From sequence record NC_055733.1: 64,000 bases of DNA. One strand, written 5' to 3'. Both the position numbers and the translations under genes were made by a program. Shown in pieces: positions 16,821 to 56,945 of the stretch. Positions within the stretch are counted from its first letter, which is position 1. Each line of letters begins with the position of its first letter. The notes beneath the pieces were generated by a model. That model worked only from the letters and a program-made list of their open reading frames with translations. It did no database searches and was not told where the DNA came from.

Positions 16821-17197
16821 TTCTTCGCTCCCATGATACAATCGGCGTTATCACTAAATCCCTGATAACTGGTATTGATCTTCTTCTCTACCAGCTTGGG
16901 TTTCTTGGCAACAACGTCACCTCTGCCGATCATCTTCTCAAGTCCAGATACTTTGTTATCAAGCTTCGTATTAAGCTCTCCCATGCGTTTTCCAAGCGTT
17001 TGACTCTGAGTTGATAGCTCCGTAATATTCTCCTGCAACTCTTTCGCCAAACGCTCCTGGCTTTCGATTTGAGTTGATAAACTCGATATCTCTTTTCTCT
17101 GATCCTCTATCGTGCTGCTCATATACCAGAAAGCGCCGCCAAGCAGAGCAATCCCAAGTACACCAGCAGTCCACTTATTCGCTAATAAACCTAACAT
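16811..17197 (-). CDS. i-spanin (Rz-like, PseT.3-like)
   Basis: One N-terminal TM, coiled coil, KKPKLVEKKIN, C-terminal Cys. Confidence 0.85.
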   Translation of the reverse strand: MLGLLANKWTAGVLGIALLGGAFWYMSSTIEDQRKEISSLSTQIESQERLAKELQENITELSTQSQTLGKRMGELNTKLDNKVSGLEKMIGRGDVVAKKPKLVEKKINTSYQGFSDNADCIMGAKKCK

Positions 17198-17432
17198 ACT
17201 TCTCCTTATGTCTCATGATTTTGTGAACAAGCACATTACTATTTACAAACAACTGAACCGTTTCCTTTGTGTGAATTTCGAGCGCACCAGTAATGAAATC
17301 CTTGATAAAGAACTTATTACCCTTCCGACTGATTGCATACAGATTGCGACAATTGACGATGTAATGACGTTCGCCCTTATAGAACCGTGCTATCAGTTGA
17401 CTTGATGCCATAAGCCTTGATTGGGAACACAT
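17175..17432 (-). CDS. Hypothetical protein
   Basis: About 78-85 aa; start uncertain. Confidence 0.55.
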   Translation of the reverse strand: MCSQSRLMASSQLIARFYKGERHYIVNCRNLYAISRKGNKFFIKDFITGALEIHTKETVQLFVNSNVLVHKIMRHKEKYVRFISE

Positions 17433-17670
17433 CGGTAGCGACGATAGGATCGATTACCTCAGCTTTCTCATAATCAGTCATACACTCGTTTAGCTTCTTA
17501 AAGAAAGCGTTGGCATCGCATTCCATAGCGCATACAGACGGTATATCACCATGCACGATAAATGGGTGAATAGGATTACCGGTGTATTCGACTGTGCCAA
17601 CTTTGTTGATCTTCTGCTTGTGTACCAAGTACAGTTTGCCGTCTTTATAAATATCTTTCATGCTAAACAT
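17377..17670 (-). CDS. Hypothetical protein
   Basis: 97 aa, GAGGAA SD, first gene after promoter. Confidence 0.65.
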   Translation of the reverse strand: MFSMKDIYKDGKLYLVHKQKINKVGTVEYTGNPIHPFIVHGDIPSVCAMECDANAFFKKLNECMTDYEKAEVIDPIVATDVFPIKAYGIKSTDSTVL

Positions 17671-17691
17671 ACGAAATTCCTCATAGCTAAT

Positions 17692-17728
17692 GAGCTAACA
17701 TACTATCATAGCTCGGTAAACATTACAA
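17692..17728 (-). promoter_or_regulatory. Promoter with inverted repeat around the -10 box
   Basis: TTGTAA-17-TAGTAT with TG extension; GAGCTA/TAGCTC arms. Confidence 0.6.
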
Positions 17729-42800: not shown

Positions 42801-43532
42801 ATTGTATTGGACGGTTCGTTTATCATAGGAACAACAATCGATTCTAACATGACTCCGGTTGCGACTTTTGGTAGAAACGGAACACTAACAACCGCTGGAA
42901 TTGTTTCTAATGGCGGACAAGATCCAACTAATGCCAATCACTTGACACGTTGGGATTATACCGAAAATCGTTATATGCGCAAGACTGGAAACTTTGATGA
43001 AACTATTACAGGTTTCAAGACATTCCAGAACAACACAACGTTTAGTGCTGGCGCCGGTAACGCATTCAGTATTAAAATTGGTCCTGATTCTGAGAAAGCT
43101 GGTATTTACGCTCACCCGGATGGAACACTTGCAATTGGATCAAACGGAACTTTGCGTTTGCGTCCACGCTCAATGACAGATGCTACCAATCAAACATCGA
43201 TTGATACAAACGGCGTAATGACTGTGGCTAGTCAAGTTAAATCTTTGGCAACCGCACCGAAAGACGCTAATGACTTAACCCGCAAGGATTACGTCGATGG
43301 ATTGGTTGACGATGTTACCAAGTCTGCTGATATTCGCGTAAATAAGAAAGGTGACAACATGACTGGTGAATTGATTATTACGTCTCCGCAAGCTATTACA
43401 GCAAACGGTGATGTGACTATCAAAGAATTGCTAACAGTTAAACGTCTGAGAATTGAAGTCGGCAACGGCGAGTTCTTGGAAATCAGACCAAACGCAACAA
43501 CCAGATCTGTTGATTTCGTATGGATTAGTTAA
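39825..43532 (+). CDS. 34: Long tail fibre proximal subunit gp34
   Basis: RATAGLDAAGKRAIN, GVNVDFF; repeated ATET..G...IATQAE...VTP motifs; 1235 aa. Confidence 0.95.
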   Translation: MALQPLRATAGLDAAGKRAINFGYPDKSFGGDGVNVDFFIYENTIQPHSPSRTYPKDFAVVYNDRIYISQVAITAPEAFNLNKWKATRVDPSWRVVTSTANLQGNVRQGEYILSQVVGANSVYTMPFDAANGIPAAGDTVVVKDNGFATHDYEIVVNGNGKNINGHPTYRITLAGSTTVFIYNGTEWVAQVWSPGEHNRTYVSSSSYIPGENWFRAKVGDHLVRETQYGGGIRIRLPRYANHGDTIVTYDLDGLNPVTKTELFVYPNSGHKILTGVGATPVDSVKSDTTGFGYFIFDARTNQWRIFESDRAVRWNRIESNYTAILGEKLAVHAAKSTDTITVTFPQDASNGDSFIIDTSYMVQGSKIVLKIPDAQANDYIVPDDNALSTPYVTKYRDIVKDLTKFTTKSESLTIDGRSHQWEFTYFRNALNTGLDVWVLITNSPVPFRVDRNDTSFVGLAAIANQEEVNKNKEQITAGQNRDCEAFVTPETLANKIATMTMRGIARIATDAESKATSGNNEAWNGVIMTPEKVNNRLATETMRGVLTVATQAQANAMSGTGEMWAQTAITPKVLDGRKATETQTGITYQVIQAGAKQAERGTKGVGVHDFDEHYRYVTPKTLFEKVATDTSQGMGFTATQAEANAGTDNHANGPLFVTAKTLHGRQATTELTGLSRAVTDAEMSSNTPPTGDNIHVTPDAIVKRTANETRWGLAETATQAEVDAGVLHDRYFITPLTNKVWLDGTRLTVEDSSGLTTEGTIWKGQKFDIKLATETQRGSLRVATQAESNTMINPIDDTVITPKKLNARVATETLTGIIEIATKAEADTGTDATRAMTPIRVIDSIRTSVNHRMTDSRYGVGMMCVLANDASANTVWQGDDIKGSTRPIGSYANDNIVVSPRALNTALSHYLPILGVAESSRSMDTADGTRVEADDWIRRTVAQTITGAMKFTENVVVEKRTTRIVLNDSGTGHNTCIQYSTKAKDTGWLTGVIVLDGSFIIGTTIDSNMTPVATFGRNGTLTTAGIVSNGGQDPTNANHLTRWDYTENRYMRKTGNFDETITGFKTFQNNTTFSAGAGNAFSIKIGPDSEKAGIYAHPDGTLAIGSNGTLRLRPRSMTDATNQTSIDTNGVMTVASQVKSLATAPKDANDLTRKDYVDGLVDDVTKSADIRVNKKGDNMTGELIITSPQAITANGDVTIKELLTVKRLRIEVGNGEFLEIRPNATTRSVDFVWIS

Positions 43533-43542
43533 CGGAGGCCAA

Positions 43543-46500
43543 ATGGCTGAATTAGTTATTGCCCGTGTTACTGAACAGGGTATACAAGCGCGTGATTTGT
43601 CGGAAACATTTTCTGGCGATAACGAGTTGATCATTAAGGGTCAACAGGGCAACGCAGGGGGAACTTGCGTTGCCGCCCTAAATGGAGTCAGCCTTAGCCC
43701 TTCAAATTTGAAGGGCTTAAACTGCATTCATTTAACAGAAGATTTCAAATCAACCGCCATGACGTTTGATTTTAGTGTGTCAACGGACACAGATCGATTT
43801 ATCAATTGGGTAAACGGAATTTCAACCGGTATTATTCTTCTAATGAGTCATACCGAAAACGTTACCAACGATAAGCTAAACACGTATTTTGATCAAATAG
43901 GAAGCGTTGGTTGGAAATATTATTGGAATCCAGACAAGGGAACTCACCGTAGTTCTTATGTCGCTATTATTGATTGTCCACTGAAAAAGATCATGACTGA
44001 ACAGTTTATGGGTCATGGTAAAACAACAATGCAGGCCCAGCTATGTGTCGTATTTGATACATTCGCGGATATTGGTGTTACCGGTTATGGTGATATGCTC
44101 GCGTGGGAAGAAAATGAGGTATTCGTTGAAACACCTGGTTACGGAGTAGTTACGTATTTTGATAATAAACCACAAACTCTGAATATTAAACCAGGTGAAA
44201 TGATTGAGATAAATGCCGAAGTTTGGAAATCAAAAGAAGCGCACGCCGCTGGAACTGGTTCCGCACTAATCGTACAGTTCTGGGGAGATCCAATTCCTCC
44301 GGCAACTGGCAATCCGGGCTCAAGATATATTAGCTCGTTTAGCGTTAATGCTAAAGGAGTTGAAACTTGGGAAAAAGGAACAAATAGTGCGATTGTTCCG
44401 GCTGCATGTACGAGAATAGAGGCAACTCTATATCGATATCCAAACAAAAATAGCAGTGCAAAAATTGGTATCCGCGATGTTATGATTAAACTCAAAAAGC
44501 CGGATGTTGTTAAACAACGTTCAAACGGTACTGTTGGTCAGTGGGGTTTTATTACCGCTAATGCGAATGCAGCCGAAAGTTCTGCTAACTGGGTAGCGAG
44601 TTCCAAAGGACAAGATTTGATTACTCATTCATATGAAGAATTGGATCAAGAATGGCTACCTCAATTTAATCAAGACGGACATTTTGATATTCCAGATTGG
44701 ATTCCAGGATCTAAATTTGAAATCAGTCAGACTATTTCATATGATTATCCTGTTGACGGAGAAACTTGGATGCGTTCCGGAATGGGTGGAGTTACCGACG
44801 GAAAAGAAGATCGTAGTTTGAGGATGGGAATCCGTACCATTAATCATCCAGACGGAGAAGCACATTCTTTATTTTACGCAGGTGCGAGATCCGACACAAA
44901 AGCAACAATTGAATATGGTAGACCATATACATATAAAATTGTTGTTGACGGAGCAAATGTCCAATTCTTTATTGACGGCGTAGAGCAACCTAAAATTGGA
45001 ACAACAACTCCGTTTAGACAAGTAACCCATTTCGCGGTTGGAGCAGAGAAGCGAGGAAATACATATATCCATCGTATTCGTGGTTCCGTTCATGAACTTA
45101 ATATGATTGATAAAACAAGAACAGACGGAACAAATGATCGTTATTATAACTTTGTTCGTCCTGGACAACTCGATGATAAAAGAACAGTTCCTGGAAAATC
45201 TCGTTGGTCCGGCATCGAATACTTTGCCGATAACGTTACGCCGGATGATAGCGCGAACACTCTTTACTGTGGAGCTGGGTCAAAGCTTGTGCCAGGCGGC
45301 CTAAGCGATGATAGCACGGATGTATATGTCACGATACTAGATGCGGGTGGAAACACGTTGGCGCACGGACTAGAGCTTAATAAGCGATATCTATGTCGAC
45401 CTAAGTGGCTAGATAACCCCAGACTGGATTGGGTACAATCTCAAAGTCAATTTGCACTGAGAAATCCACTGTCTCCAACGTCGGGAGCTTGGATTGTTGA
45501 AGAAGCTGGTAAAAACGCAAAGACTATGAAAGTCAGAATAGAATGTGTTACATCGCCAAAAATAAACGGAACCGTTACCAACGTTGACTGGATCGATATT
45601 AACAAGCAAATCGCTGGATTCAATGGAGTCAATCAATGCGCGGATATTCCCATGTGGAAAGGCCCGGGAGAGTTTCAAGTTAAGTTCAACTATGAGAAAA
45701 CCGGACAAGCCCAATACGTGTTAGAAGGAAGAACGTCTACCGAAACAGATAACAAATACGGCTATATCTATATTAATAGCGCGGACTCTATTGACGTAGG
45801 CGGGTCTATTGTTGTATCTACTATTAACGGCATGCCGTATACCAACGGAATGAAAGTTGTTCCTAACACAGACTATCTGATTTGTGGTTATATCAGAGAA
45901 GGAAGTCAAGTAAACCGAATTGGTGCTCGATACAACAATATTGAGTATTTCAAAGGTTATATCTGGGATCTCTCATTTGACGGATCTTCCGATGACCGTT
46001 ATTACAAAAATTATAACGTGAGTCGTTATGATGCATATAACAACTATATCAGAGACGAGTTAGGAAAGTCCAGAACAATTTATTCGAATGTGAATCTAAA
46101 TGACTTTTCTTTCTTTACTACCGCTGTGAAGCAGAATACAAAGTCTTATAAGTTCAATACCGCTACAACTCCGAGTGGATCAGTTCTTAAAATAGACGCA
46201 AAGAAAGGAATGATGTTGAGGATCGATTTTGATATTTCCGGAGAAACGGAATACGAACTAAGATACTCTAATACCCATGACGGTAACGCTCCGGTTATAA
46301 AACGTCTTCCGGCTGGTCGTAATAGGGGATCGTTGTGCTATAACGTGACTACAGATAATCACGGTATCTACATTCGCACAATAAGTCCTAAAGCGAATGA
46401 GACTGTTTTTGTTAGTAGACTTAATGTGAGCGAGGTATACACCCACGCAATCATTAGTAATACCGAAGGCAAAGACTATAAGCTGGACGAAAGAGAATCT

Positions 46501-47250
46501 CCTGTCATGAAAACAAATACAAGACTACAATGGGTACCGCAGTTCAATGCGACGAACAAAGGGCTTCTGTTAGTAGAAAACGCATGGAAACCAGATCCAA
46601 AAGACTGGGCTATTAGGGTAAAATGTAAAGTCGGTGAATTGCGAGATTCTGTTAATCCTATTATCAGTGGCGATAAGTATGATACAAGTTCAATCAACAT
46701 TGATCAGTTTGGTAGCGTTGGCGATATACGTGTATTCTCTTATAACTCCAAAAAAGTATTGAATACCGGGGTAACGCTGAAAACCGGAGCTAAAGTGGGA
46801 GACGTTTTGGACATCTTTGTTAAAGTAACAGGGAATAACGTCACATTAAATGTGAACGGGAAATCTGTTAGTGGAGCGTGGAATCCGGACGGAACAGAAT
46901 ACGTCAAACTTATCGGAGCAAGAGAAACTGGATTAAGATATAACAACGACATTTATCTCGTTGAACTTATCGACAGTAGCACAAAACTCTGTAATAGCAG
47001 ACGTTACGATCTCTCTTATTATTCAACTGTGCAACCTACTTTCACCGTTATTGAAAACGAACTCGGTGCAATTAAATACGTGAGAATCGCAGAGATTGAC
47101 GCGAAAGAAGGAATATTTGGATGGGACGGAACCAAAGGAGAAGAATTCCAAATAGGAAGAATGAAAGACTCATGGTTTATTGACGGGCATCAAATGGATC
47201 TTTTCACTACTATAAATAAGAGTGGGTATACTGCTACTTGCGATTTGTAG
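43543..47250 (+). CDS. 35: Long tail fibre hinge/knee gp35, greatly extended (about 1235 aa)
   Basis: Position between 34 and 36; GGAGG SD; N-terminal gp35-like region (HRSSYVAI) followed by beta-rich domains. Confidence 0.75.
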   Translation: MAELVIARVTEQGIQARDLSETFSGDNELIIKGQQGNAGGTCVAALNGVSLSPSNLKGLNCIHLTEDFKSTAMTFDFSVSTDTDRFINWVNGISTGIILLMSHTENVTNDKLNTYFDQIGSVGWKYYWNPDKGTHRSSYVAIIDCPLKKIMTEQFMGHGKTTMQAQLCVVFDTFADIGVTGYGDMLAWEENEVFVETPGYGVVTYFDNKPQTLNIKPGEMIEINAEVWKSKEAHAAGTGSALIVQFWGDPIPPATGNPGSRYISSFSVNAKGVETWEKGTNSAIVPAACTRIEATLYRYPNKNSSAKIGIRDVMIKLKKPDVVKQRSNGTVGQWGFITANANAAESSANWVASSKGQDLITHSYEELDQEWLPQFNQDGHFDIPDWIPGSKFEISQTISYDYPVDGETWMRSGMGGVTDGKEDRSLRMGIRTINHPDGEAHSLFYAGARSDTKATIEYGRPYTYKIVVDGANVQFFIDGVEQPKIGTTTPFRQVTHFAVGAEKRGNTYIHRIRGSVHELNMIDKTRTDGTNDRYYNFVRPGQLDDKRTVPGKSRWSGIEYFADNVTPDDSANTLYCGAGSKLVPGGLSDDSTDVYVTILDAGGNTLAHGLELNKRYLCRPKWLDNPRLDWVQSQSQFALRNPLSPTSGAWIVEEAGKNAKTMKVRIECVTSPKINGTVTNVDWIDINKQIAGFNGVNQCADIPMWKGPGEFQVKFNYEKTGQAQYVLEGRTSTETDNKYGYIYINSADSIDVGGSIVVSTINGMPYTNGMKVVPNTDYLICGYIREGSQVNRIGARYNNIEYFKGYIWDLSFDGSSDDRYYKNYNVSRYDAYNNYIRDELGKSRTIYSNVNLNDFSFFTTAVKQNTKSYKFNTATTPSGSVLKIDAKKGMMLRIDFDISGETEYELRYSNTHDGNAPVIKRLPAGRNRGSLCYNVTTDNHGIYIRTISPKANETVFVSRLNVSEVYTHAIISNTEGKDYKLDERESPVMKTNTRLQWVPQFNATNKGLLLVENAWKPDPKDWAIRVKCKVGELRDSVNPIISGDKYDTSSINIDQFGSVGDIRVFSYNSKKVLNTGVTLKTGAKVGDVLDIFVKVTGNNVTLNVNGKSVSGAWNPDGTEYVKLIGARETGLRYNNDIYLVELIDSSTKLCNSRRYDLSYYSTVQPTFTVIENELGAIKYVRIAEIDAKEGIFGWDGTKGEEFQIGRMKDSWFIDGHQMDLFTTINKSGYTATCDL

Positions 47251-47498
47251 GAAATAAGAGACCATTTAATTCCGTTGATATTGAGTTGTATCAGATCGAC
47301 AACAATAATAACGAACAGTTAATCGGAACATTCAACGCAAATCAATCAGTTGATGCGTTTGGATATGGAATTCCGGAAAACGAAACTGTTAAAACTTGGT
47401 TTAGCGAGTTGAACTCCACCAAGAAAGTTGTCTTTAGACCAAAAGGATCCGGAGCAAGAGTTAGTATTCTGGATGCAAAACCTTGGGTCTCAATCTAA
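47238..47498 (+). CDS. Probable frameshifted C-terminus of gp35, or a small separate late gene
   Basis: One extra T at 47238 joins ...SGYTAT-LRFVGNKRPF; TATAAATA at 47211 is the alternative explanation. Confidence 0.5.
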   Translation: MRFVGNKRPFNSVDIELYQIDNNNNEQLIGTFNANQSVDAFGYGIPENETVKTWFSELNSTKKVVFRPKGSGARVSILDAKPWVSI

Positions 47499-47538: not shown

Positions 47539-47564
47539 GCCCTGACTTCGGTCAGGGCTTTTTT
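47539..47564 (+). terminator. Intrinsic terminator
   Basis: GCCCTGAC-TTCG-GTCAGGGC-TTTTTT. Confidence 0.92.
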
Positions 47565-47576
47565 ATTTCAAAATCG

Positions 47577-47583
47577 CTAAATA
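47577..47583 (+). promoter_or_regulatory. Late promoter CTAAATA for distal fibre 1
   Basis: Between terminator and GAGG SD. Confidence 0.65.
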
Positions 47584-47608: not shown

Positions 47609-50600
47609 ATGGCAGATCTTAAATTAGGGTCTCAGATTGGTGGAAATCTAATCTGGCACCAAGGAATCCTGGAATTAAATCCCGTTGACGATAAACTATT
47701 TTATCGTGATCAGGAAATAATGACTACAAAAGGGTACCAAACAATGCTTGGCTCAATCAAGTTTGGTACACCGAATAACGCTTATGATATCGAGAGTCTT
47801 GGCACAGAAGCAGGTGCGGGAACAAAGCGTTATTTGCGTAAAATGAAATCGGGCGCAAGTGCTACTATTTGGCATGAAACTATTCTGGATAACGTATACA
47901 CGATTTCGACTGGTATAACTGATGCGGCTCCGCAGTTTACGATCACTAATGGAAATAGCGCGACATTTCAGTTCCCTGTATTAACTAACAGTCCACAATC
48001 TGGCGCAGCAAATAGTTTCGCTAGAAAAGACTACGTGGACGCTGTTGATGCTAGAAACGTTGCTAAAGCGGGCGATACAATGACCGGTACTCTTACTGTG
48101 CCAAAAATTGTTGATAACAACACAAATATTGGTAAGGATATTCTTACTTATATTAAACTGAGTAATGTAAATCAGTGGGCTGGTCCCGTTGGACAATCTC
48201 GATTTGTTACGCCAGATTCTGTTGGTAGTCCAGCTGGTAATAAGGGCGGATATTGGAACGTATTATCTCGCCGCGATTCTGCTGGAGGGTATGCCGGTAT
48301 CTTTATTCCGTATGGCAACAGTGAAAACAAAAACTATATCGGCACACAAGAACTTGGAACTAATGCTCCAATTTGGGCAGAGATCTATACCAATCTGAAT
48401 AAACCAACACCGGGCGATCTGAATGCTTACACCAAATCGGAAGTTGATGAAAAGAGTTGGATCAGAGTTAGAGATGAAAGAGAGGCAATGATTCAGCCAA
48501 GTGCGCTGGATGCTCGCACAATTTCGGCTTATTTCACAAACAAGAGCGACGTTTCAACAAACTGGGTTTCTGGTTTCACTGTTAAAGGCTGGGATACAAC
48601 TTACGCATCTTGGTCTATTTTTTCTAGTTCAAGATCTGACACCGATGATAAACGTCTTTGGTTTAAGCATGGTAGAACCGATTGGGCTCCTAGTTCAAGA
48701 ATTTATCATGAGAATGATAAGCCAACAAACGTTGAGTTGAATCTGGTATCACGCGACGGCGATGAAATGACCGGTCTATTGAATATGAAAGTTCCGGATT
48801 CAATGGGTTACGGAAAATACAGCATTCAATTGAATAACGGGTCTATCGGCGGAATCAATCAGTTAGTATTCAACGATCCGTCTGATGCAACTAGCGAAGG
48901 TATTGCTTGGCCAAAAACCGGTAAGAATTCATCATCCGAAACACAAGCAGATTATGATATGTTATGGGCTTTTGACGGTAAGCTTCTATTCAATAACAAA
49001 GAAACTTACGGAGAATGGAATAAGCCAACAAATAACGATTTAAATCTGGTATCTCGTGCTGGTGATATTATCAAAGGCGAACTTGAGATTCAGAATGCAC
49101 CGCTTACATTGACTAACGGTATGATGTACGTTAATAACGGCAACACAAAAAGAGTTATTAAACGTCTAGGTGTGCAAAATGACGCAAAAGCAATGCTGAT
49201 TCTAATTGCACCAAAATACGTTGGCAAAGCATTACCAAAACGCGGATTTGTTGGTCGAGTTACATTTGAGCGTGGTTCAACAGGTTCAACCCTACAAGCT
49301 AACTACGTTGATATTTCTGCCGTAACTGCATACACAGAAACAGATGCTCAGATTCATTATGAGTCAGGTGGAACTCCTGTAAAACTCGTTTATCATACGC
49401 ATACCGATGGCATAGAATATCTTGCACTGTATCGCGGAGTAGTTAGTGCGGCTACAATTTACATCGATGGATATGTTTATGGAGAAGAGCCAGTTGTTAT
49501 TTCTGACGCTACTGGATTGACATTCACCGATCTGAAAACAAGAGCTAGAATTTACAGCTCAGATAATAAGCCAACTAATGTTGATTTAAATCTGGTATCA
49601 CGCGCTGGTGATACAATTACCGGTGATTTGATTGCAACTAACATTTATTCGTCTGTTACTCAAAGCACACGTGGCGATTCTTTTGCTCGTAAAGACTACG
49701 TTGATACCAAGGTAGGCACAGCGGTACAGAGCGTTACCGCTACTGGAGCAGTTAAGAGCACAGGTGGTATTAACCCAGTTATCAGTTTGATTAACGCAAC
49801 AAACTCTGCCGACGGTGCAATGTCTGCTGCCGATAAAGCCAAACTAGACGGTTTGCCTTCCGCCGCGGTTAATAAGACTGGCGACACTATGACTGGCAAC
49901 TTGACATTCACTAATAATAGTGAATTGGTGTGGAGTCGAAATACAGACTGGGCAAAGATTGGATTCAAGAACGACTCGGACGCAGATACCGATAGCTATA
50001 TGTGGTTTGAGACTGGTGATAATAAGAACGAGTATTTTAAGTTTAGGATGCACAACACAACTGGACCAAAACACGAAGTTCTGGATATCAAACTGGAAGG
50101 ATCAACATTCGCACACGATGTTATTCTAAAGGCGAGAGAATCTAACGCTGTCAAGTTGACTAACGCGCAAACAGAATATACAGGCAATACCGGCGTTGAG
50201 CGTATTATTGGTGGAATCACTTCGCAGTGGTACGAAGACAATCTAGTATTTGGACACGTTCGTTCTCCAGGTCAGCCGTCTGCTGGGTTTGGTGTTAGAT
50301 TGAATGACGCTTATTTGATGCGAGTCACACCGGACAGAAGACTTGCAACTGGTGCTCTTGTTGGTGATAGTTATGTCGCAGTTGCTAAAAATGATCGCAT
50401 TTTGGCAATGGAAGTTGATACAACAACTAAAGTTCCTTACATTTCAGTAGATGTGAAATATCAAGCAATTAGATTTGAAAACGATAGAGCAATCACTATG
50501 CCAGCCGGCGCTCTTAACGTGGCGAGTAATGTTTCTTCTGGCGGAGATGTATTTGCAAAATCAAACGTGAATGTAACTGGACAATATATTCAGTTCAACG

Positions 50601-51766
50601 ACAAAGCGGCGGGTAAGACCGCTGGTGAAACTGGCATTACAACAGCAAGATTTGTTGAAATGTTAACAGCACTCGGTGCATTCAAGACTGTTTATTGGTG
50701 TGGTAAAGTTTCGTGGGATTATGCTGGTAATAACGTATTGACCGATACGGGATATGGTAATATTCATTTGGCTGGATGCGTTGTTGAAGTTATTGGTACG
50801 GCTCAATATATGATCCGTATTACTACTCCGACAATAACAGGAACTTCTCTGACAGGAGCACAGAATAACGCTAGTAAAGAGTTCATCTATGTTAATCACG
50901 GTTCTACATATGCGCCTGGTTGGAGACGCGGTATTAATAGCCTAGACGTTAGAGATTTGAATTCAGCTACGTCTGTTGGAGATCCACGCAATACTATTCC
51001 TTATATCAAGGGTGATGGTGTTATGGAAATCTCTACCTTCATTGATATGCATCGTAAAGATTCAACTGCTGATTTTGATACTAGATTAGAATGTGGTAGC
51101 GCAAAACAACTATTGGTGACGAACTCAAATGGAACACTAGAGTTGGGAGCACAGAATGCTAGTTATGCTCACATTTATACAGATCGTCCTGTATTCTACA
51201 TGAACAAAGAATTGCAGATTAATGGCGCTCGCGTAATGTATGAGGGTTCCACTCACGGAACATTAACTCTAAGTAACTGGATTAGAACAACAGGTAATAC
51301 CGGCTGGTTTAACGCAACGTACGGTGGTGGAATCCACATGGAAGACGCAACTTGGTTACGCGCATATAACGGTAAAAAGTTTTATGTTGCGAATACAGAT
51401 GGCGACGCATTGAATACATCCGGTGGTGTTTATGCTGCTGGTAATGGTAATTTCAACGACGTTCAAGTTCGTTCGGATGAAAGATTGAAATCTAATTTCG
51501 AGCCAATTTTGAATGCTTTGGACAAAGTTGATTCTCTTTCTGGTTGGATATATGACAAAGTTGGCAAAACAACTCGCGAAGCGGGTATTATCGCACAACG
51601 TTTGAAAGCAGTATTGCCAGAAGCTACTGGAATAGCGAAAGATTCTATGAATCCAAATGCAATCGAGTATCTGACTGTTTCTAACTCTGGCGTTAACGCG
51701 CTGTTGGTAGAAGCAATCAAAGAACTTAGAGCCGAGTTGAACGAACTTAAATCAAAACTTAACTAA
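47609..51766 (+). CDS. 37: Distal long tail fibre 1: gp36-like N-terminus fused to gp37-like shaft, with C-terminal S74-type intramolecular chaperone
   Basis: MADLK.GS..GG..IWHQG (gp36), RKDYVD and GDTMTG repeats, SDERLK...GIIAQ...LPEA...LLVEAIKEL. Confidence 0.88.
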   Translation: MADLKLGSQIGGNLIWHQGILELNPVDDKLFYRDQEIMTTKGYQTMLGSIKFGTPNNAYDIESLGTEAGAGTKRYLRKMKSGASATIWHETILDNVYTISTGITDAAPQFTITNGNSATFQFPVLTNSPQSGAANSFARKDYVDAVDARNVAKAGDTMTGTLTVPKIVDNNTNIGKDILTYIKLSNVNQWAGPVGQSRFVTPDSVGSPAGNKGGYWNVLSRRDSAGGYAGIFIPYGNSENKNYIGTQELGTNAPIWAEIYTNLNKPTPGDLNAYTKSEVDEKSWIRVRDEREAMIQPSALDARTISAYFTNKSDVSTNWVSGFTVKGWDTTYASWSIFSSSRSDTDDKRLWFKHGRTDWAPSSRIYHENDKPTNVELNLVSRDGDEMTGLLNMKVPDSMGYGKYSIQLNNGSIGGINQLVFNDPSDATSEGIAWPKTGKNSSSETQADYDMLWAFDGKLLFNNKETYGEWNKPTNNDLNLVSRAGDIIKGELEIQNAPLTLTNGMMYVNNGNTKRVIKRLGVQNDAKAMLILIAPKYVGKALPKRGFVGRVTFERGSTGSTLQANYVDISAVTAYTETDAQIHYESGGTPVKLVYHTHTDGIEYLALYRGVVSAATIYIDGYVYGEEPVVISDATGLTFTDLKTRARIYSSDNKPTNVDLNLVSRAGDTITGDLIATNIYSSVTQSTRGDSFARKDYVDTKVGTAVQSVTATGAVKSTGGINPVISLINATNSADGAMSAADKAKLDGLPSAAVNKTGDTMTGNLTFTNNSELVWSRNTDWAKIGFKNDSDADTDSYMWFETGDNKNEYFKFRMHNTTGPKHEVLDIKLEGSTFAHDVILKARESNAVKLTNAQTEYTGNTGVERIIGGITSQWYEDNLVFGHVRSPGQPSAGFGVRLNDAYLMRVTPDRRLATGALVGDSYVAVAKNDRILAMEVDTTTKVPYISVDVKYQAIRFENDRAITMPAGALNVASNVSSGGDVFAKSNVNVTGQYIQFNDKAAGKTAGETGITTARFVEMLTALGAFKTVYWCGKVSWDYAGNNVLTDTGYGNIHLAGCVVEVIGTAQYMIRITTPTITGTSLTGAQNNASKEFIYVNHGSTYAPGWRRGINSLDVRDLNSATSVGDPRNTIPYIKGDGVMEISTFIDMHRKDSTADFDTRLECGSAKQLLVTNSNGTLELGAQNASYAHIYTDRPVFYMNKELQINGARVMYEGSTHGTLTLSNWIRTTGNTGWFNATYGGGIHMEDATWLRAYNGKKFYVANTDGDALNTSGGVYAAGNGNFNDVQVRSDERLKSNFEPILNALDKVDSLSGWIYDKVGKTTREAGIIAQRLKAVLPEATGIAKDSMNPNAIEYLTVSNSGVNALLVEAIKELRAELNELKSKLN

Positions 51767-51799
51767 GGAGGACGGGGAGAAATCCCCGTTATTATTATG
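51765..51799 (+). promoter_or_regulatory. Split translation start: SD, GAAA hairpin, ATG
   Basis: AAGGAGG + ACGGGGA-GAAA-TCCCCGT + 7 nt + ATG. Confidence 0.8.
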
Positions 51800-52249
51800 G
51801 TAGCATTACCGTTTTTTATGAGCACAGCTAACTCGGAATTTCGAGCAAACGGCTGGGGATCTAATATGAGAACACAAGCTGGATTACCAGCCGCTGGTAT
51901 GATAAGTGAACTCGTTGAAAAAGCATTCTTGAACTTAATTGAGGCGCCGAGATACACTCACTTTGTTCCGGTTGATTTCTGGTTTGATGGCACCAACACT
52001 ATAATCAAACATGGTGGACCATATGGCTCTACAGCTCAATATGCTGTTATTGCTGGCAACCCATGGATCTATATTAGATTTGAAGGTGCGATGATAGCTG
52101 ATGGCATTGCCGCTAATACGTGGCAAAGAATGAGCACGGCCGCAGTTAAGATTAGAAGAGTGTGGAGCACTGGCGGAAAAGCGTTTGTTACTTTTGGCAA
52201 CGCGCCATTTTCACCACAGAAACGATATGATTGGACTTTCACTGGATAA
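51797..52249 (+). CDS. 38: gp38-like fibre-tip adhesin
   Basis: Follows a fibre with cleavable chaperone; N-terminus loosely like T2-type gp38 attachment helices; gene-38-type hairpin start site. Confidence 0.6.
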   Translation: MVALPFFMSTANSEFRANGWGSNMRTQAGLPAAGMISELVEKAFLNLIEAPRYTHFVPVDFWFDGTNTIIKHGGPYGSTAQYAVIAGNPWIYIRFEGAMIADGIAANTWQRMSTAAVKIRRVWSTGGKAFVTFGNAPFSPQKRYDWTFTG

Positions 52250-52250
52250 T

Positions 52251-52275
52251 AAGGAGCTTCGGCTCCTTTTATTTT
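52251..52275 (+). terminator. Intrinsic terminator
   Basis: GGAGC-TTCG-GCTCC-TTTTATTTT. Confidence 0.9.
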
Positions 52276-52277
52276 AT

Positions 52278-52284
52278 CTAAATA
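52278..52284 (+). promoter_or_regulatory. Late promoter CTAAATA for distal fibre 2
   Basis: Same layout as fibre 1. Confidence 0.65.
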
Positions 52285-52308
52285 TGACTATAAACGAGAG
52301 GAGTCACA

Positions 52309-55300
52309 ATGGCAGATCTTAAATTAGGGTCGCAGATTGGCGGAAATCTAATCTGGCACCAAGGCATTCTAGAATTAAATCCTCTGGACGATAGCCTATT
52401 TTACAAAGAATTCGACATGATCACTTCTAAGGGTGGTCAGACAATTAATGGTACACTGTCACTAGCTGGTGATGTTGATACAAAAGGAAGATTTACCGCA
52501 GTTGGTAATGATACTTCTTGGGGTTCGGTCGCTCAACCAGCATTTGGAATGGACAAAGATAATACCGCTGGTGCTCATTGGCTGCTTGCCAGTCGCAAAC
52601 GTGACGGAAGTCAACGTGCTGGTATTCAAGTTCTTACAAATGATTCTGGTGAAATGCGTATCTACACAAACAAACATGCTAATTACACTTCATTTAAAGA
52701 CGGCCAAATCTATATTCAAGCTACCACTCCGTCTGCTGATGCAAATGCAACTAGAAAAGATTATGTGGATCGAGAAGTTGATAAAGCGATGCAATTTGCG
52801 GAAACAACAACTGATAAACTTACTGCCGATTTAGCTACTGCTAATACCAGAATTAATACTCTTGACGCGCAAAACGTGAAGATTACTGGCAATCAGAATA
52901 TCGCTGGCACTAAGACTTTCACCGACTTGCCTGTTATTCAAGATCAGCCAACTGCTGATACACACGCGACAAACAAGAAATATGTTGATACCAAAGTTGG
53001 TACCGCTGTCCAAAGCATTGTTACAACTGCCCCACTGACTACTACTGGTGGTGTTAACCCAACGCTGGCCATCAATCCTGCGACTCGTACCGCTGCTGGG
53101 TCTATGAGCGCACAAGACAAAGTTAAACTTGATGATTTGCCTGCCGATGCATTGAGTCGTTCTGGTGGTAACATGAAGAATGGTGGATATATCAAGCTTG
53201 AAGGACTTGGTGGATTGCAATCACTGTATAACGGTAAAAATTATTCTATTCTGAGAGATCATAATAACGGTAACGTTACTCTTGGTGCAGCCGCTGGTGA
53301 TTTGTATGTTGGTTATAACACAACATCAGAAGAGTTTACGACTAAAAACGTATTGCTTTATGCGCCTATGAAATGGACTAATACAAACCGTGTTCTAGTT
53401 GATACTGACGGCTTTATTCCGTGGGCTAGTATTAAAGATCGCATTGGTCTTGAAGGCAAGTCTAAAATGTTGAGAGGACCAATCAACTTTGACGAACTGG
53501 AAAGCACAGGCGATTATAACTTGTATCTTGCTAAAGCAACTGGATCTAAAAACCCGCCGCCATTTGATTATGGTACTATGAGTGTTATTGGTGCTGATAA
53601 AGATGGAAATACTTTTGTTACTCAATTAGCAACAGATCAAAGAACTGGGATTAGTTATACCAGAACACGTAATGATGGTGCTATGGCATGGACTGGCTGG
53701 ATTGAGAATGCCAACGAGTTTACTGATTTTGGATATCAATATAAAACCCGAATCGAAGTTGGTGGTGACGCAGACAAGTTTTATCCAGTGGCAATAGAAA
53801 ATGATAGATTTCGCACATACAACACAAAACGATATTGTATATCCCGCGCATACAACGCAAAGGCACCTGATACTTGGAACAACACAACACACAAAGGTGG
53901 TTTAACTCTTTCTTTTGAATGGAGTGGTGATGGTGATTGGGGTGGAAACTCTAAAAACATTGTTGTGACTGATTTTAGTTCGTCTTATACAACTGTTTGT
54001 GGTGGTATGCAATTATCAGCGGGTGATATGGTTGTTTGGTTAAGAGGCGGTGGTGCGGAATACTGGTTCTATAGTGACAATGGTATTAAATCAAGAATAT
54101 CCGTTAACTTAAAAAAGTTTATTGCACCAGATAAGAAAGAGTATTTGCCCAGAACTAAAGCGGAAGCAGATCAAGCAGTTATTGATGAAATCATGCCTAA
54201 ATTCGCAATTCGCAATGGCGGCGAACTATATGATCGCAATCGTAGAGTTCTAGTTGCCGATGGTTCTACCTCAATGATTGGCGATCTCAAAATTGAGAAA
54301 GAACAAGCCGCATTGATTCTGAAAAACGCTGCTGGTAACGTGGCGGATAAACCAGAAAACTATGGTCGTATTAGATTCGAACATGCAACTGGGGATCAAC
54401 ACGTTGAGTTGTGGCATTCAGTACATGACGATTACAGACCCGGATATGGATTAAGAGTTCTTAAACCGGCTGATAATAAAGGTACAAGTAATGCTTGGCT
54501 TGATGTTCAAGGTGATGTATTTGGACAAAACTTTATTCAAACTACAGCACAATCCACAAATGCGGCATCTAGCACACGGAAAGATTATGTTGACGCATTA
54601 ATTGCAACTAAAGTGAATAAATCTGATGTTGCTGCTAGTTCTGATTACGCTGGACTATTGGGTAAGATTCCAAGATGGTGTATTTGAAATTGCTCGTTAT
54701 ATCGATTTTCATACAGTTGGAAGCACAAGAGATTTCGATGTTAGACTGGATTGCTATGAAACTGGAAAGCTTAATGTTGTTGGTGGGGTTTTGCAAGTTG
54801 GCGGTGGCGATGTGTATCACAGCAAAAACAAACCAACTAATACGGATTTGAACCTAGTTAGTCGTGCTGGCGATACAATGACTGGCGCGTTGACACTGCC
54901 GAAGATCAAGGGTGCTATTAACTTGATGGACAAAGCAAGTGTTAAATTTGTTGATGGTGCGAATACTTGGTTCCATTTGTTTTCCGAAGGTAATCTATTC
55001 AAGATAAGTCAAGGAACAACTGGTCAGAATAATGTTCTGAGTATCGGAAGTGATGGTGCCGTTAATATGATTGGTAACTTGACTAACACCAAAATGATAA
55101 CATCAAACACCGCTATCGGAGTTGACGCTAATACTAGAAAGATTGCGTTTGAAGTTGGTGATGATAAAACTCCTTATATCAGTGTTGATTATGCATATAG
55201 AGCATTACAGTTTAACGAAAATAAAACTGTTACCGCGACTCATGGATTTGAGATTAATGGCAAAAACGGAAACGGTGATTACTTCGTTAATCACACTGGA

Positions 55301-56374
55301 TTTGTTGGAGGATGGGCTCGTGGTTTACGTGCTGTAAACTCTGCTGGTGCTATTAGTGCTGGTATTGGGTTTAATGGCGAAGGCGATAAAGTTGACAACA
55401 TTTATCTTGGAGTTGGTGCAACACCGTGGGGTGATGGAACATTAAGTGCAATGAAGATTTCTGCCGATAGAGTTAACATCAGTAAACCAACATGGGTAAA
55501 TAGCGGTAGATTCCAGATTAACTCGGCCAGTCATAACATTCTTGAATTCCATACACCAGGTAAACACGCTCGATTGATTTGGATGGACGGAACTACAGGA
55601 CAGATGAATATAGGTATATCAAATGGTTCATTTACAGAGGCAACTCGTATCGCATCCATTGGCAGTTCAACAATTGAACTTAATGGTGCTACTTGGTCTG
55701 TAAATTATCGACATGATTATGCCGGTCAGTTTTCTACCACTGCTCCATTTCACGTCAGTTACGGTGCCATTCCAGGCACAAGTGATTATTACCCACTTGT
55801 TCGGGGTCGGGGATATGCAACTGGATCCGGATATACAACTGACGTTGATTTTGGTGTATTGCGTTCCGGTGGAACTTGGGGCCAAGGCGTTATTCGCGTT
55901 GGTTCGGCAGAAAGTAACTCTGCCGGGGTACAAGCGGCGTTTTACTTTGATATCAATGGGAACTTTAGAGCGCCTGCTGGTGTTTATGATAGTGGAAACA
56001 GATGTTATTCAGCGAGTAACCCAGTTCCAGCTGGTCATCACAATCACGCGAATTTGAGAGCAAGAGACGCTGTTATTATTTGGGATGGTGATATTGGCAA
56101 CGGAAACTTCACACTAACAAGACCTTGGTCAGACTTTGACTTTGTTTGCTTCTGTGTATTGTGGGATGATGGCGGCGGACTATCAACCAAGACATTCTCA
56201 AGATACGATTTGGAGATAAACCAAGCAATTGGCGTCAACTATGATATCTCTGGCGGTGCTGGCGGTATTCAGTGGATGGGTAGATTTGCCGCTGATAATA
56301 GATCGTTCGCAACTAGCTATGAAAACGGTCGTATGCGTAGAGTGTTTGGATATAACATGGGAACAGTGAACTAA
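52309..56374 (+). pseudogene. Distal long tail fibre 2 (gp36/37-like), split by a +1 frameshift at about 54673; either a pseudogene or an assembly error
   Basis: First 25 aa identical to fibre 1; ...GKIP (frame 1) continues as DGVFEIARYIDFH (frame 2); joined length about 1354 aa. Confidence 0.75.
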
Positions 56375-56407
56375 ATAACTCAAAGGGGCTTCGGCCCCTT
56401 TTCTTTT
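56371..56407 (+). terminator. CTAAATA late-promoter motif followed by UUCG terminator
   Basis: CTAAATA...GGGGC-TTCG-GCCCC-TTTTCTTTT. Confidence 0.8.
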
Positions 56408-56420
56408 AAAAGGAGAAAAT

Positions 56421-56945
56421 ATGTTAGCTTTAAGAATGATTCAATTTTGGACTTTGCTTCCTATTCATTTGTTTATGTGCCTAACGTGCTGGATCTTATC
56501 ACCAGTGCTTCCGTTATTCGCACTAAATAAAGAAACACTGCCTAAATGGTTGAGCTGGTTTCAAACTCCAGACGCGCCATTAGACGGTGATAGCGGACAT
56601 GTTGAACGTTGTACTGGATATCCTAGATATGTTCAGCGAGTGCTATGGCTTATTAGAAACCCTGCATATGGATTTGCTTGGTCCGTTTTAGCTTATCAGC
56701 CTAAGTCCAAAGATTTCAATTGGAAGGGCTCATTGGGTTATACAAACGGGAAAGAACACGGATTCGGGTGGTATTTCATTACTCAACCCGACGGCCATTT
56801 TCAGTTCTTTGTTAGAAAGCCGAGTGTATTCGGACAACAGTTTTATTTCAGATTCGGTTGGAAGATTATTGGCATTGCAACGGCAGGAACTTGGCATGAG
56901 CGTAAAAAGTTTGTATTTACACTGAATCCTATTGACGGAGGCTAA
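56421..56945 (+). CDS. Phage membrane-associated protein of unknown function
   Basis: Hydrophobic N-terminus; LP.WLSWFQTPDAPLDGD and WLIRNPAYGF motifs; AAGGAG SD. Confidence 0.75.
   Translation: MLALRMIQFWTLLPIHLFMCLTCWILSPVLPLFALNKETLPKWLSWFQTPDAPLDGDSGHVERCTGYPRYVQRVLWLIRNPAYGFAWSVLAYQPKSKDFNWKGSLGYTNGKEHGFGWYFITQPDGHFQFFVRKPSVFGQQFYFRFGWKIIGIATAGTWHERKKFVFTLNPIDGG

What the first reader, a model, noticed from the sequence alone, without database searches (positions are those of the whole stretch)
47609..56374. Two alternative distal tail fibres sharing an identical knee-docking N-terminus
Seen: two gp36/37 fusion genes of similar length, each with its own terminator, late promoter and SD. 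The first 25 aa are identical, and all six nucleotide differences in those 75 nt are synonymous, indicating selection on both. The tips differ: fibre 1 has an S74 chaperone plus a gp38-like adhesin, and fibre 2 has a different tip and no chaperone. Shared KPTN.DLNLVSR.GD and YVDTKVGTAVQS blocks provide homology for module swaps. Inference: one gp34/35 pair can carry either fibre, giving mixed virions or a switchable host range. Recombination between the 5' repeats would delete fibre 1 and its adhesin (4.7 kb).
Basis: partly seen in the sequence, partly recalled or inferred. Interest (0 to 1): 0.7.

Follow-up and report, generated by a model that had tools for sequence, protein, structure and literature searches.

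The report
Tandem alternative phage tail-fibre genes
Aeromonas phage Ah1 has two different long-tail-fibre tip genes side by side that start with the same 25-residue attachment segment; this layout was already described for its relative Aeh1, and in this record the second gene is interrupted by one frameshift.

Summary
The window is Aeromonas phage Ah1 (Straboviridae, Cinqassovirus). The core observation holds. Two tandem gp36/37-type distal fibre genes begin with 25 identical residues, and all 6 nucleotide differences there are synonymous. In seven related phages the same 25 codons show 10-16 synonymous and 0-2 non-synonymous changes between paralogues, so the protein segment is under strong constraint. 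This N-terminus matches the gp36 N-terminus of about 1,370 phage records, while gp35 is single-copy. Fibre 1 ends in a Peptidase_S74 chaperone domain. It is followed by a 150-aa protein whose N-terminal anchor matches that of a GP38-family adhesin, but whose body does not. Each fibre has a conserved hairpin, a TAAATA late-promoter-like motif and a Shine-Dalgarno site.

It carries one frameshift, as does gp35. All ten other related genomes examined have it intact, and the part after the shift shows no decay (dN/dS 0.19).

The tandem duplication was published for Aeh1 in 2011 with its function left open. The most likely mechanism is two homotrimeric distal half-fibres competing for one gp35 knee, giving mixed virions. 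This is inferred, not shown. No switch element was found. This is a new member of a known kind, of moderate to low interest.

The parts
39825..43532 (+). gp34, proximal half-fibre (1235 aa)
   Evidence: Annotated as gp34 in NC_055733. CTAAATA lies 37 nt upstream.
43543..47498 (+). gp35-type knee protein. It is unusually large (about 1318 codons in relatives), single-copy, and interrupted in this record by one frameshift.
   Evidence: phrog_11229 is matched by two ORFs in different frames. avDM12 and L015 gp35 are 98-99% identical and fully covered in two frames. One place per genome in 462 records.
47539..47558 (+). hairpin terminator after gp35
   Evidence: 8-bp stem, 6 GC pairs, T-run. Conserved in relatives.
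47577..47583 (+). late-promoter-like CTAAATA upstream of fibre 1
47609..51766 (+). fibre 1: gp36/37-type distal fibre, 1385 aa, intact
   Evidence: phrog_19567 full length. PDB hits to Mu S/S' and to the S16 gp37 tip 6f45_A.
47609..47683 (+). shared N-terminal 25-codon module, fibre 1 copy
   Evidence: About 50% identical to gp36 N-termini over 39-40 aa.
51473..51766 (+). Peptidase_S74 intramolecular chaperone domain of fibre 1. The predicted cleavage follows Ser1289.
   Evidence: Pfam match at residues 1289-1339. The S|D motif and the preceding ~12 residues are conserved in 8 phages.
51771..51790 (+). hairpin between fibre 1 and the small ORF, with a weak T-tract
51797..52249 (+). small 150-aa protein with a conserved gp38-type N-terminal anchor and a variable beta-sandwich body; candidate tip adhesin of fibre 1
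52251..52268 (+). hairpin terminator after the small ORF
52278..52284 (+). late-promoter-like CTAAATA upstream of fibre 2
52309..56374 (+). fibre 2: gp36/37-type distal fibre with a globular C-terminal tip and no S74 domain. Interrupted in this record by one frameshift and otherwise complete.
   Evidence: Both ORFs match phrog_26758. AsFcp_4 fibre 2 is covered at 1356 of 1359 residues in two frames at 87% identity. Tip model and fold hits.
52309..52383 (+). shared N-terminal 25-codon module, fibre 2 copy
49681..49727 (+). RKDYVD/YVDTKVGTAVQS block in fibre 1; a mosaic junction and homologous to a block in fibre 2
   Evidence: Megablast matches to AsFcp and PX29 start here. High-identity segments start at about aa 700 in all relatives. 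Repeats.
56382..56401 (+). hairpin terminator after fibre 2
56421..56945 (+). neighbour: DUF7338 membrane protein upstream of lysozyme e. It probably belongs to the lysis cassette and is not a fibre accessory.
   Evidence: Pfam DUF7338 at 160 bits. Found in 606 phage records in varied contexts, sometimes annotated as holin. Absent at this position in Ahp1_CNU-2021.

Best explanation
In Aeh1-like Aeromonas phages, including Ah1, the distal half of the long tail fibre is encoded twice in tandem. Each gene fuses a gp36-type N-terminus to a gp37-type shaft and tip, and each is transcribed from its own late promoter.

Each product forms its own homotrimer. Both then compete, through the same conserved ~25-residue N-terminus, for the single gp35 knee protein. 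The six fibre positions of a virion are therefore filled with a mixture of two distal half-fibres that have different receptor-binding tips.

Fibre 1 folds with a C-terminal S74 chaperone domain, which is cut off after Ser1289. The small downstream protein then docks on the exposed conserved end through a gp38-type N-terminal anchor and presents a variable beta-sandwich domain as the adhesin. Fibre 2 ends in its own globular tip and needs no dedicated partner.

Shown here: gene anatomy, homologies, purifying selection, conserved expression signals and mosaic exchange.

Inferred: docking on gp35, homotrimer formation, S74 cleavage, the adhesin role and mixed virions.

In the Ah1 record itself fibre 2 is interrupted once. 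This isolate may therefore make fibre 1 only.
For: SHARED N-TERMINUS
- 25 of 25 residues are identical, with 6 synonymous and 0 non-synonymous changes.
- Seven other genomes show 10-16 synonymous and 0-2 non-synonymous changes in codons 1-25, against about 24 non-synonymous changes in codons 26-60.
- The same pattern occurs independently in Cronobacter S13: 22 of 25 identical, 12 synonymous and 3 non-synonymous.
- The N-terminus matches gp36 'distal connector' N-termini in 1369 phage records. Two copies per genome were seen only in the Aeh1-like group and in S13/LPCS28: 1389 places in 1369 records, with every two-place record in the listed top hits from these two groups.
- gp35 is single-copy.
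[quoted passage not shown] At least three fibres are needed for infectivity (PMC3004832).

BOTH GENES ARE MAINTAINED
- Both are intact in 10 of 11 related genomes.
- Both are under purifying selection, with dN/dS of 0.19-0.29 against AsFcp_4 and PX29.

EXPRESSION SIGNALS
- Hairpin, nTAAATA and GAGG lie upstream of each fibre in 8 phages.

FIBRE 1 TIP AND SMALL PROTEIN
- Fibre 1 has S74, S16 gp37 tip homology and a conserved mature end.
- The small protein's N-terminus aligns with the N-terminus of a GP38-domain protein that follows an S74 fibre gene (hhalign 96.9%, E 1.8e-10).
- Its body does not co-vary with the fibre 1 tip. This fits an adhesin better than a tip-specific chaperone.

FIBRE 2 TIP
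- The fibre 2 tip model's best fold hits are phage receptor-binding tips: phi812, T7 gp17 and phage K gp144.
Against: - There are no virion data. I found no proteomics or imaging of this phage group in the paper library.
- Docking of either N-terminus on gp35 was not tested.
- gp35 here is 3.5 times the T4 size, so its stoichiometry may differ from T4.
- In Ah1, fibre 2 and gp35 each carry a frameshift.
- The small protein has no Pfam GP38 or Gp38_N hit of its own and no informative fold match.
- The fold matches for the fibre 2 tip have low TM-scores (about 0.3), and the model is a monomer of a trimeric protein.
Confidence: 0.5

Rival explanations
1. In Ah1 as sequenced, fibre 2 is truly inactivated. 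It was dispensable on the propagation host and was recently lost by a short indel. This isolate then uses fibre 1 plus the small adhesin alone, and the two-fibre system works only in relatives.
For: - Fibre 2 is read in two frames, whereas 10 related genomes have one ORF.
- The interruption is a short indel whose length is not divisible by three. It does not lie in a homopolymer, so it is not a typical base-calling slip.
- A fibre that is unused on a single laboratory host is expected to be free to break.
Against: - No decay follows the shift. There are no further stops, and dN/dS downstream is 0.19 against AsFcp_4.
- Two other genes in the same 64 kb are also frameshifted, including gp35, which in T4 is a structural component of the long tail fibre (PMC3004832). 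This suggests the assembly carries errors.
- No reads are available to decide between the two.
Confidence: 0.4
2. Branched fibres: the enlarged gp35 holds both distal half-fibres at once, so each knee carries two arms and a virion carries twelve.
For: - gp35 is about 1318 aa, against 372 in T4. Only its first ~320 residues match the usual gp35 family (PMC3004832).
- Both fibres are conserved together in every member of the group.
Against: - No internal repeat in gp35 suggests a second docking site.
- Cronobacter S13 also has two distal fibres but a gp35 of only 501 aa.
- Trojet et al. state that fibre length fits a single gp37 trimer (PMC3157838).
- Near-identical N-termini suggest one shared site.
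Confidence: 0.08
3. A regulated switch: only one of the two genes is expressed in a given infection, through DNA rearrangement or differential late transcription, as with the Mu or P1 invertible fibre segments.
For: - Fibre 1 shares shaft segments with Mu S/S' (8ju3, 5yvq).
- Trojet et al. raise 'a single expressed version' as one possibility.
Against: - No inverted repeats flank either gene, and no recombinase gene is in the neighbourhood.
- Both genes are on the same strand and have equivalent promoter-like motifs and Shine-Dalgarno sites in 8 phages.
Confidence: 0.05
4. Mixed trimers: subunits of both genes co-assemble into heterotrimeric fibres through the common N-terminus.
For: - The first 25 residues are identical, and the first 52 are 69% identical.
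- Trojet et al. mention a random mixture of subunits as a possibility.
Against: - Beyond about residue 52 the two proteins are unrelated apart from short motifs.
- Fibres with C-terminal chaperone domains trimerise from the C-terminus (established for S74 domains). The two C-termini differ entirely.
Confidence: 0.03

Closest known systems
Tandem g37 duplication of Aeromonas phage Aeh1 (Trojet et al. 2011, PMC3157838)
   Same: It is the same locus in the type phage of the genus: two tandem gp36/37-like genes (Aeh1p335 and p337) between gp35 and lysozyme e, each followed by a small ORF. The paper leaves the function open, as either a mixture of subunits or one expressed copy.
   Different: The paper does not describe the shared N-terminus and its strong constraint, the gp38-type anchor of the first small ORF, or the lysis-cassette affinity of the second small ORF. 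In Ah1 the second fibre and gp35 are each interrupted by one frameshift.
T2/S16/RB49-type distal fibre: gp37 with a self-cleaving C-terminal chaperone plus a monomeric gp38 adhesin (PDB 6F45; PMC9569957, PMC12032242)
   Same: Fibre 1 has Peptidase_S74 and homology to the S16 gp37 tip. A small gene lies immediately downstream, and its N-terminal ~45 residues align with the attachment segment of a GP38-domain protein.
   Different: The small protein has no GP38 domain and no glycine-rich motifs. Its body is predicted as a ~100-aa beta-sandwich with no informative fold match. It does not align with the canonical gp38 of Cronobacter S13.
Cronobacter phages S13 and LPCS28
   Same: Two tandem distal fibre genes have near-identical gp36-type N-termini (22 of 25 residues), with mostly synonymous differences, downstream of a single gp35.
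   Different: This is an unrelated lineage. Both of its fibres end in S74, a canonical GP38 follows only the second, and its gp35 is 501 aa.
Mu G-segment and P1 C-segment alternative fibres (S/S')
   Same: Two alternative fibre tips serve one virion architecture, and shaft segments of fibre 1 match Mu S/S' structures.
   Different: Those systems switch by site-specific inversion, so one tip is made per infection. Here there are no inverted repeats and no invertase, and both genes stand in the same orientation with their own promoters.
Multi-receptor-binding-protein phages with conserved N-terminal anchors (K1-5/SP6 dual tailspikes, ViI/CBA120 tailspike sets, T5-like DT57C LtfA/LtfB); from my own knowledge, not tested here
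   Same: The principle is the same: a conserved N-terminal docking module joined to variable receptor-binding parts, which widens the range of receptors.
   Different: Those phages display all their proteins at once on adaptor or branched structures. Here both proteins appear to target the same single site on the knee.

Membership tests
gp36-type distal connector (N-terminal module) | Sequence homology of the N-terminus to gp36 of T4-like phages | tested here: met
   tblastn of the first 50 aa matches 1369 phage records, mostly annotated as hinge or distal connector, at about 50% identity over 39-40 aa. phrog_1425 matches fibre 2 residues 1-208 at E 5e-9.
gp36-type distal connector (N-terminal module) | Pfam Phage_T4_gp36 domain (PF03903) | tested here: not met
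   No hit in fibre 1 or in either fibre 2 ORF at E<=0.01.
gp36-type distal connector (N-terminal module) | Physical binding to gp35 | not testable with these tools
   Inferred from T4 assembly order (PMC3004832).
gp37 distal subunit with S74 intramolecular chaperone | Peptidase_S74 domain at the C-terminus | tested here: met
   Fibre 1 residues 1289-1339, 46 bits against a cut-off of 22. Fibre 2 of Ah1 has none, whereas fibre 2 of Ahp1_CNU-2021 has one.
gp37 distal subunit with S74 intramolecular chaperone | Homology to a solved gp37 tip | tested here: met
   6f45_A (S16 long tail fibre distal subunit) at E 2.3e-5 over fibre 1 residues 1265-1384.
gp37 distal subunit with S74 intramolecular chaperone | Autoproteolytic release of the domain | not testable with these tools
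   Only the conserved Ser|Asp motif and flanks in 8 phages are seen.
Gp38 adhesin (Pfam GP38 PF05268 plus Gp38_N PF21721) | GP38 receptor-binding domain with glycine-rich motifs | tested here: not met
   No hit even at E<=10. The model is a plain beta-sandwich, and Foldseek does not return 6F45.
Gp38 adhesin (Pfam GP38 PF05268 plus Gp38_N PF21721) | N-terminal attachment domain | tested here: inconclusive
   No Gp38_N hit for the Ah1 protein. Relatives P0011, P0009 and P0012 score below the cut-off (13.8-18.5 bits against 25). The family profile aligns to the N-terminus of GP38-domain protein P0025 at hhalign probability 96.9% and E 1.8e-10. There is no alignment to S13 gp38.
Gp38 adhesin (Pfam GP38 PF05268 plus Gp38_N PF21721) | Gene placed directly after an S74-bearing fibre gene | tested here: met
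   The same holds for P0025 in L014.
Invertible alternative-fibre switch (Mu G / P1 C type) | Inverted repeats flanking the alternative segments, plus an invertase gene | tested here: not met
   Only three short, imperfect inverted pairs were found, and none flanks a gene. No recombinase is among the neighbours.
Aeh1-type tandem distal fibre locus | gp34, large gp35, fibre 1, small ORF, fibre 2, (DUF7338), lysozyme e, in this order | tested here: met
   The order is the same in Ah1, Aeh1, avDM12-TAAL, PX29, AsFcp_4, phiAS5, phiWae14, Ahp1_CNU-2021 and metagenomic contig L015.

The most novel reading that the evidence does not exclude
The 3.5-fold enlarged gp35 knee of Aeh1-like phages may carry both distal half-fibres at the same time. 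That would give branched long tail fibres with twelve receptor-binding arms, an architecture not described for T4-like phages.
Probability: 0.08. Interest if true: 0.7.

Novelty: new member of a known kind. Interest (0 to 1): 0.33.

Why it matters
Tail-fibre tips set which bacteria a phage can attach to. How a T4-like virion with one knee protein uses two different distal fibres has been an open question since the Aeh1 locus was described in 2011.

The data here sharpen that question in two ways:
- The strict protein-level conservation of the shared N-terminus in both copies, seen in two independent lineages, argues that both copies are used and that they use the same docking site.
- The small protein after fibre 1 looks like a gp38-type anchor carrying a new kind of head domain.

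None of this changes the known picture in kind. For users of the Ah1 record, the practical point is that fibre 2 and gp35 are each interrupted by a frameshift, and that both fibres are mislabelled as short tail fibres.

Tried and rejected
- Nucleotide-level global alignments to locate indels were too noisy at 73-89% identity and were not used. They were replaced by protein-level two-frame coverage counts and by a local comparison with close relatives that printed only gap size and homopolymer context.
- A search for relatives of the fibre 2 tip among proteins of similar length to the 3' ORF found nothing. Using the intact AsFcp_4 orthologue as the query gave 15 hits.
- PDB sequence searches gave nothing useful for the fibre 2 pieces or the small ORF.
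- Fold searches with the small-ORF model found only its own family.
- No paper in the library cites the Ah1 accession, and none reports virion proteomics of Aeh1-like phages.
- A programmed frameshift in fibre 2 was considered and rejected, because all relatives have a continuous frame.
- The DUF7338 ORF was considered as a fibre 2 chaperone and rejected.
- An invertible switch was considered and rejected.
- CTAAATA is not enriched in the window as a whole (6 matches against 9 expected). Its weight comes only from its position and its conservation in relatives.
Full report
**Identity of the window.** The 9-kb region is 100% identical to Aeromonas phage Ah1 (MG250483.1 / NC_055733.1; Straboviridae, Cinqassovirus; host A. 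hydrophila). The gene order is:
- rnh (opposite strand)
- gp34 (39825-43532)
- a very large gp35-type knee protein (43543-47498)
- fibre 1 (47609-51766)
- a small ORF (51797-52249)
- fibre 2 (52309-56374)
- a DUF7338 ORF
- lysozyme e

GenBank labels the two fibres 'gp12 short tail fibers'. The homology below does not support that label.

**Check of the observation.**
- The first 25 residues of the two fibres are identical. The 75 nt differ at six positions, all synonymous.
- The two proteins are 69% identical over residues 1-52 and then diverge.
- The quoted motifs are real. KPTN..L.LVSR.GD occurs at fibre 1 residues 371, 472 and 654 and once in fibre 2. YVDTKVGTAVQS occurs once in each fibre, within a 67-aa stretch that is 54% identical.
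- The DNA repeat at the two 5' ends is 153 nt at 77% identity and 4700 nt apart. Its longest exact runs are 24 and 23 nt.
- Hairpins with T-tracts follow gp35, the small ORF and fibre 2, and a weaker one follows fibre 1.
- CTAAATA occurs six times in the 64 kb, always on the + strand. Four of the six lie 31-50 nt upstream of the starts of gp34, fibre 1, fibre 2 and the DUF7338 ORF.
- The motif is not enriched overall. However, hairpin, then nTAAATA at -28 to -39, then GAGG is conserved upstream of both fibres in all eight phages compared. In four of them the fibre 1 motif reads ATAAATA or TATAAATA.

Fibre 2 is not a single open frame in this sequence.
- It is read in two overlapping frames, and both database records annotate two CDSs.
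- Both parts match one PHROG family of ~1308-residue fibres, at its two ends.
- The intact AsFcp_4 orthologue (1359 aa) is covered at 1356 residues by exactly two alignments in two frames, at 87% identity. That means one frameshift and nothing else missing.
- Compared with two relatives, the interruption is a short indel whose length is not divisible by three, and it does not lie in a homopolymer.
- The part downstream of the shift has dN/dS of 0.19 against AsFcp_4, no higher than the intact fibre 1 (0.27-0.29). There is therefore no decay.

gp35 is interrupted in the same way.
- It carries one single-base indel.
- Orthologues 98-99% identical are fully covered in two frames, and the downstream part has dN/dS of 0.04.
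- A third gene at 17178-17694 on the minus strand is also split.

Three frameshifted genes in 64 kb, one of them a structural fibre component, make record errors plausible. The non-homopolymer indel in fibre 2 makes a real, recent loss equally plausible. I cannot decide between the two without reads.

**Relatives.**
- The same locus, with both fibres as single intact ORFs, is present in Aeh1, avDM12-TAAL, PX29, AsFcp_4, phiAS5, phiWae14, Ahp1_CNU-2021 and a metagenomic contig (L015). L015 is 98-99% identical to Ah1 in the flanking genes.
- AsFcp_1 and AsFcp_2 also have two copies of the N-terminal module. Full-length intact fibre 2 proteins from both genomes were returned by the protein search.
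- The PX29 fibre 2 start is annotated 37 codons too short. The conserved N-terminus is in frame upstream.
- Within each genome, codons 1-25 of the two paralogues differ by 10-16 synonymous and only 0-2 non-synonymous changes. Codons 26-60 carry about 24 non-synonymous changes.
- This rules out recent gene conversion and RNA-level constraint as the cause of the identity. It shows strong selection on the protein segment in both copies.

**What the parts are.**
- *N-terminus.* It is homologous, at about 50% identity over 39-40 aa, to the N-terminus of gp36 in 1369 phage records. There are 1389 places in all. Among the listed top hits, two places per genome occur only in the Aeh1-like Aeromonas phages and in Cronobacter S13/LPCS28.
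- *gp35.* It is single-copy in all 462 records that have a match and has no internal repeat.
[quoted passage not shown] Three fibres are the minimum for infectivity (PMC3004832).
- *Fibre 1 C-terminal third.* It matches gp37-type families, Mu S/S' structures and the S16 gp37 tip. It ends in Peptidase_S74.
- *Fibre 1 cleavage site.* The Ser|Asp cleavage motif and the ~12 residues before it are conserved in all eight phages, although the ~95 residues further upstream fall into two unrelated types.

**The small ORF.**
- The 150-aa form is open and conserved in all eight phages, although several records annotate a shorter one.
- The family is tiny. It has six hits among 5.8 billion proteins and 21 representatives among 1.84 billion. 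Most of these share only the first ~45 residues.
- One such relative, P0025, carries a Pfam GP38 domain (53 bits) and lies directly after an S74 gene. The family profile aligns to its N-terminus with hhalign probability 96.9%.
- The Ah1 protein itself has no GP38 or Gp38_N hit and does not align with S13 gp38.
- Its predicted body is a ~100-residue beta-sandwich (pLDDT 70-88) with no informative fold match.
- The body does not track the fibre 1 tip. In PX29 the tip is 17% identical to Ah1's while the body is 95% identical. In Aeh1 the tip is 80% identical while the body is 29% identical.
- A conserved anchor on a conserved fibre end, carrying a freely exchanged body, fits an adhesin better than a tip-specific chaperone.
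- In gp38 adhesins the N-terminal attachment domain joins gp38 to gp37 after the chaperone domain is removed (PMC12032242, PMC9569957).

**Fibre 2 tip.**
- Ah1 fibre 2 has no S74 domain.
- Its last ~105 residues are predicted as a compact domain (pLDDT 73-90). The best fold matches, at low TM-score, are receptor-binding tips of phages phi812, T7 (gp17) and K.
- The sub-terminal part is shared with gp37 of about 430 T-even phages and with chromosomal Aeromonas 'pyocin knob' fibres.
- The DUF7338 ORF after fibre 2 occurs in 606 phage records in other contexts and is sometimes called a holin. It is missing at this position in Ahp1_CNU-2021, so it belongs with the lysis genes.
- Tips are swapped between lineages. 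PX29 fibre 2 is followed by a Tfa-like gene, and Ahp1_CNU-2021 fibre 2 ends in S74.

**Module exchange.**
- Identity per 100-aa bin is strongly mosaic in both fibres.
- High-identity segments of fibre 1 begin at about residue 700 in every relative, that is at the RKDYVD/YVDTKVGTAVQS block. Other borders fall next to the KPTN motifs.

**Mechanism.**
- The best-supported reading is that both fibres are made late, that each forms its own trimer, and that both use the same N-terminus to occupy the single gp35 knee. Virions then carry a mixture of tips.
- No switch element was found. There are no flanking inverted repeats and no recombinase gene.
- The rival readings are a truly dead fibre 2 in this isolate, branched fibres on the enlarged gp35, regulated single expression, and heterotrimers. 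The evidence for and against each is set out in the Rival explanations section.

**Novelty.**
- Trojet et al. [quoted passage not shown] They left its use open (PMC3157838).
- Ah1 is a further member of this group.
- This analysis adds four things: the strict constraint on the shared N-terminus, a parallel case in Cronobacter S13 (22 of 25 residues identical, 12 synonymous and 3 non-synonymous), the gp38-type anchor of the small protein, and the frameshifts in the Ah1 record.

My first notebook entry records the bounds of the two fibre 2 ORFs as the ORF tool printed them, and these bracket the break. My references to the pieces in tool calls use the same bounds. After that point I wrote no places of breaks.

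Noticed in passing
window 43543-47498: The gp35-type knee protein is interrupted by one frameshift (a single-base indel) in this record. It is intact in avDM12-TAAL and in metagenomic contig L015, which are 98-99% identical. The part after the shift is fully conserved (dN/dS 0.04).
   Followed up: yes
window 17178-17694 (minus strand): The orthologue of Aeh1p288 / avDM12 OPFAMLBM_00112 (hypothetical protein) is also split into two reading frames. It is the third frameshifted gene in this 64 kb, which may point to errors in the Ah1 assembly.
   Followed up: partly
window 43543-47498; L004 43-3999: gp35 of Aeh1-like phages is about 1318 aa, 3.5 times T4 gp35. Only the first ~320 residues match the common gp35 family. 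The rest has weak concanavalin/LamG-like hits and no internal repeat. It could be an extra binding module at the knee.
   Followed up: partly
window 51797-52249; L005 10520-10630: There are start-codon and name problems in the public records. The small ORF is annotated 23 codons too short in Ah1 and some relatives, PX29 fibre 2 is 37 codons too short, and the Ah1 fibres are named 'gp12 short tail fibers'.
   Followed up: yes
window 56421-56945: The DUF7338 protein with a hydrophobic N-terminus lies directly upstream of lysozyme e. It is found in 606 phage records, including FelixO1-like and RB16-like phages, and is sometimes annotated as holin. It is likely a lysis-cassette gene.
   Followed up: partly
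L010 10501-16192 (Cronobacter phage S13): This is an independent tandem pair of distal fibre genes with near-identical gp36-type N-termini. Both end in Peptidase_S74, and a canonical GP38 adhesin follows only the second.
   Followed up: partly
L009 15128-19387; L005 14382-14807: Fibre 2 tips differ by lineage. Ahp1_CNU-2021 fibre 2 ends in an S74 chaperone domain, and PX29 fibre 2 is followed by a tail-fibre-assembly-like gene.
   Followed up: partly
L014 3232-5695 (metagenomic contig, SRR31200892): An S74-domain fibre gene is followed by two consecutive GP38-family genes. The first shares its N-terminal anchor with the Ah1 small ORF family.
   Followed up: no
window 47539-47583, 52251-52284, 56382-56401: A hairpin terminator immediately followed by a late-promoter-like motif forms a compact cassette before each fibre gene. 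It recalls the promoter/stem-loop cassettes proposed to mediate module shuffling in T4-like phages (PMC4122927, PMC2839356; known to me only from their titles and abstracts).
   Followed up: no
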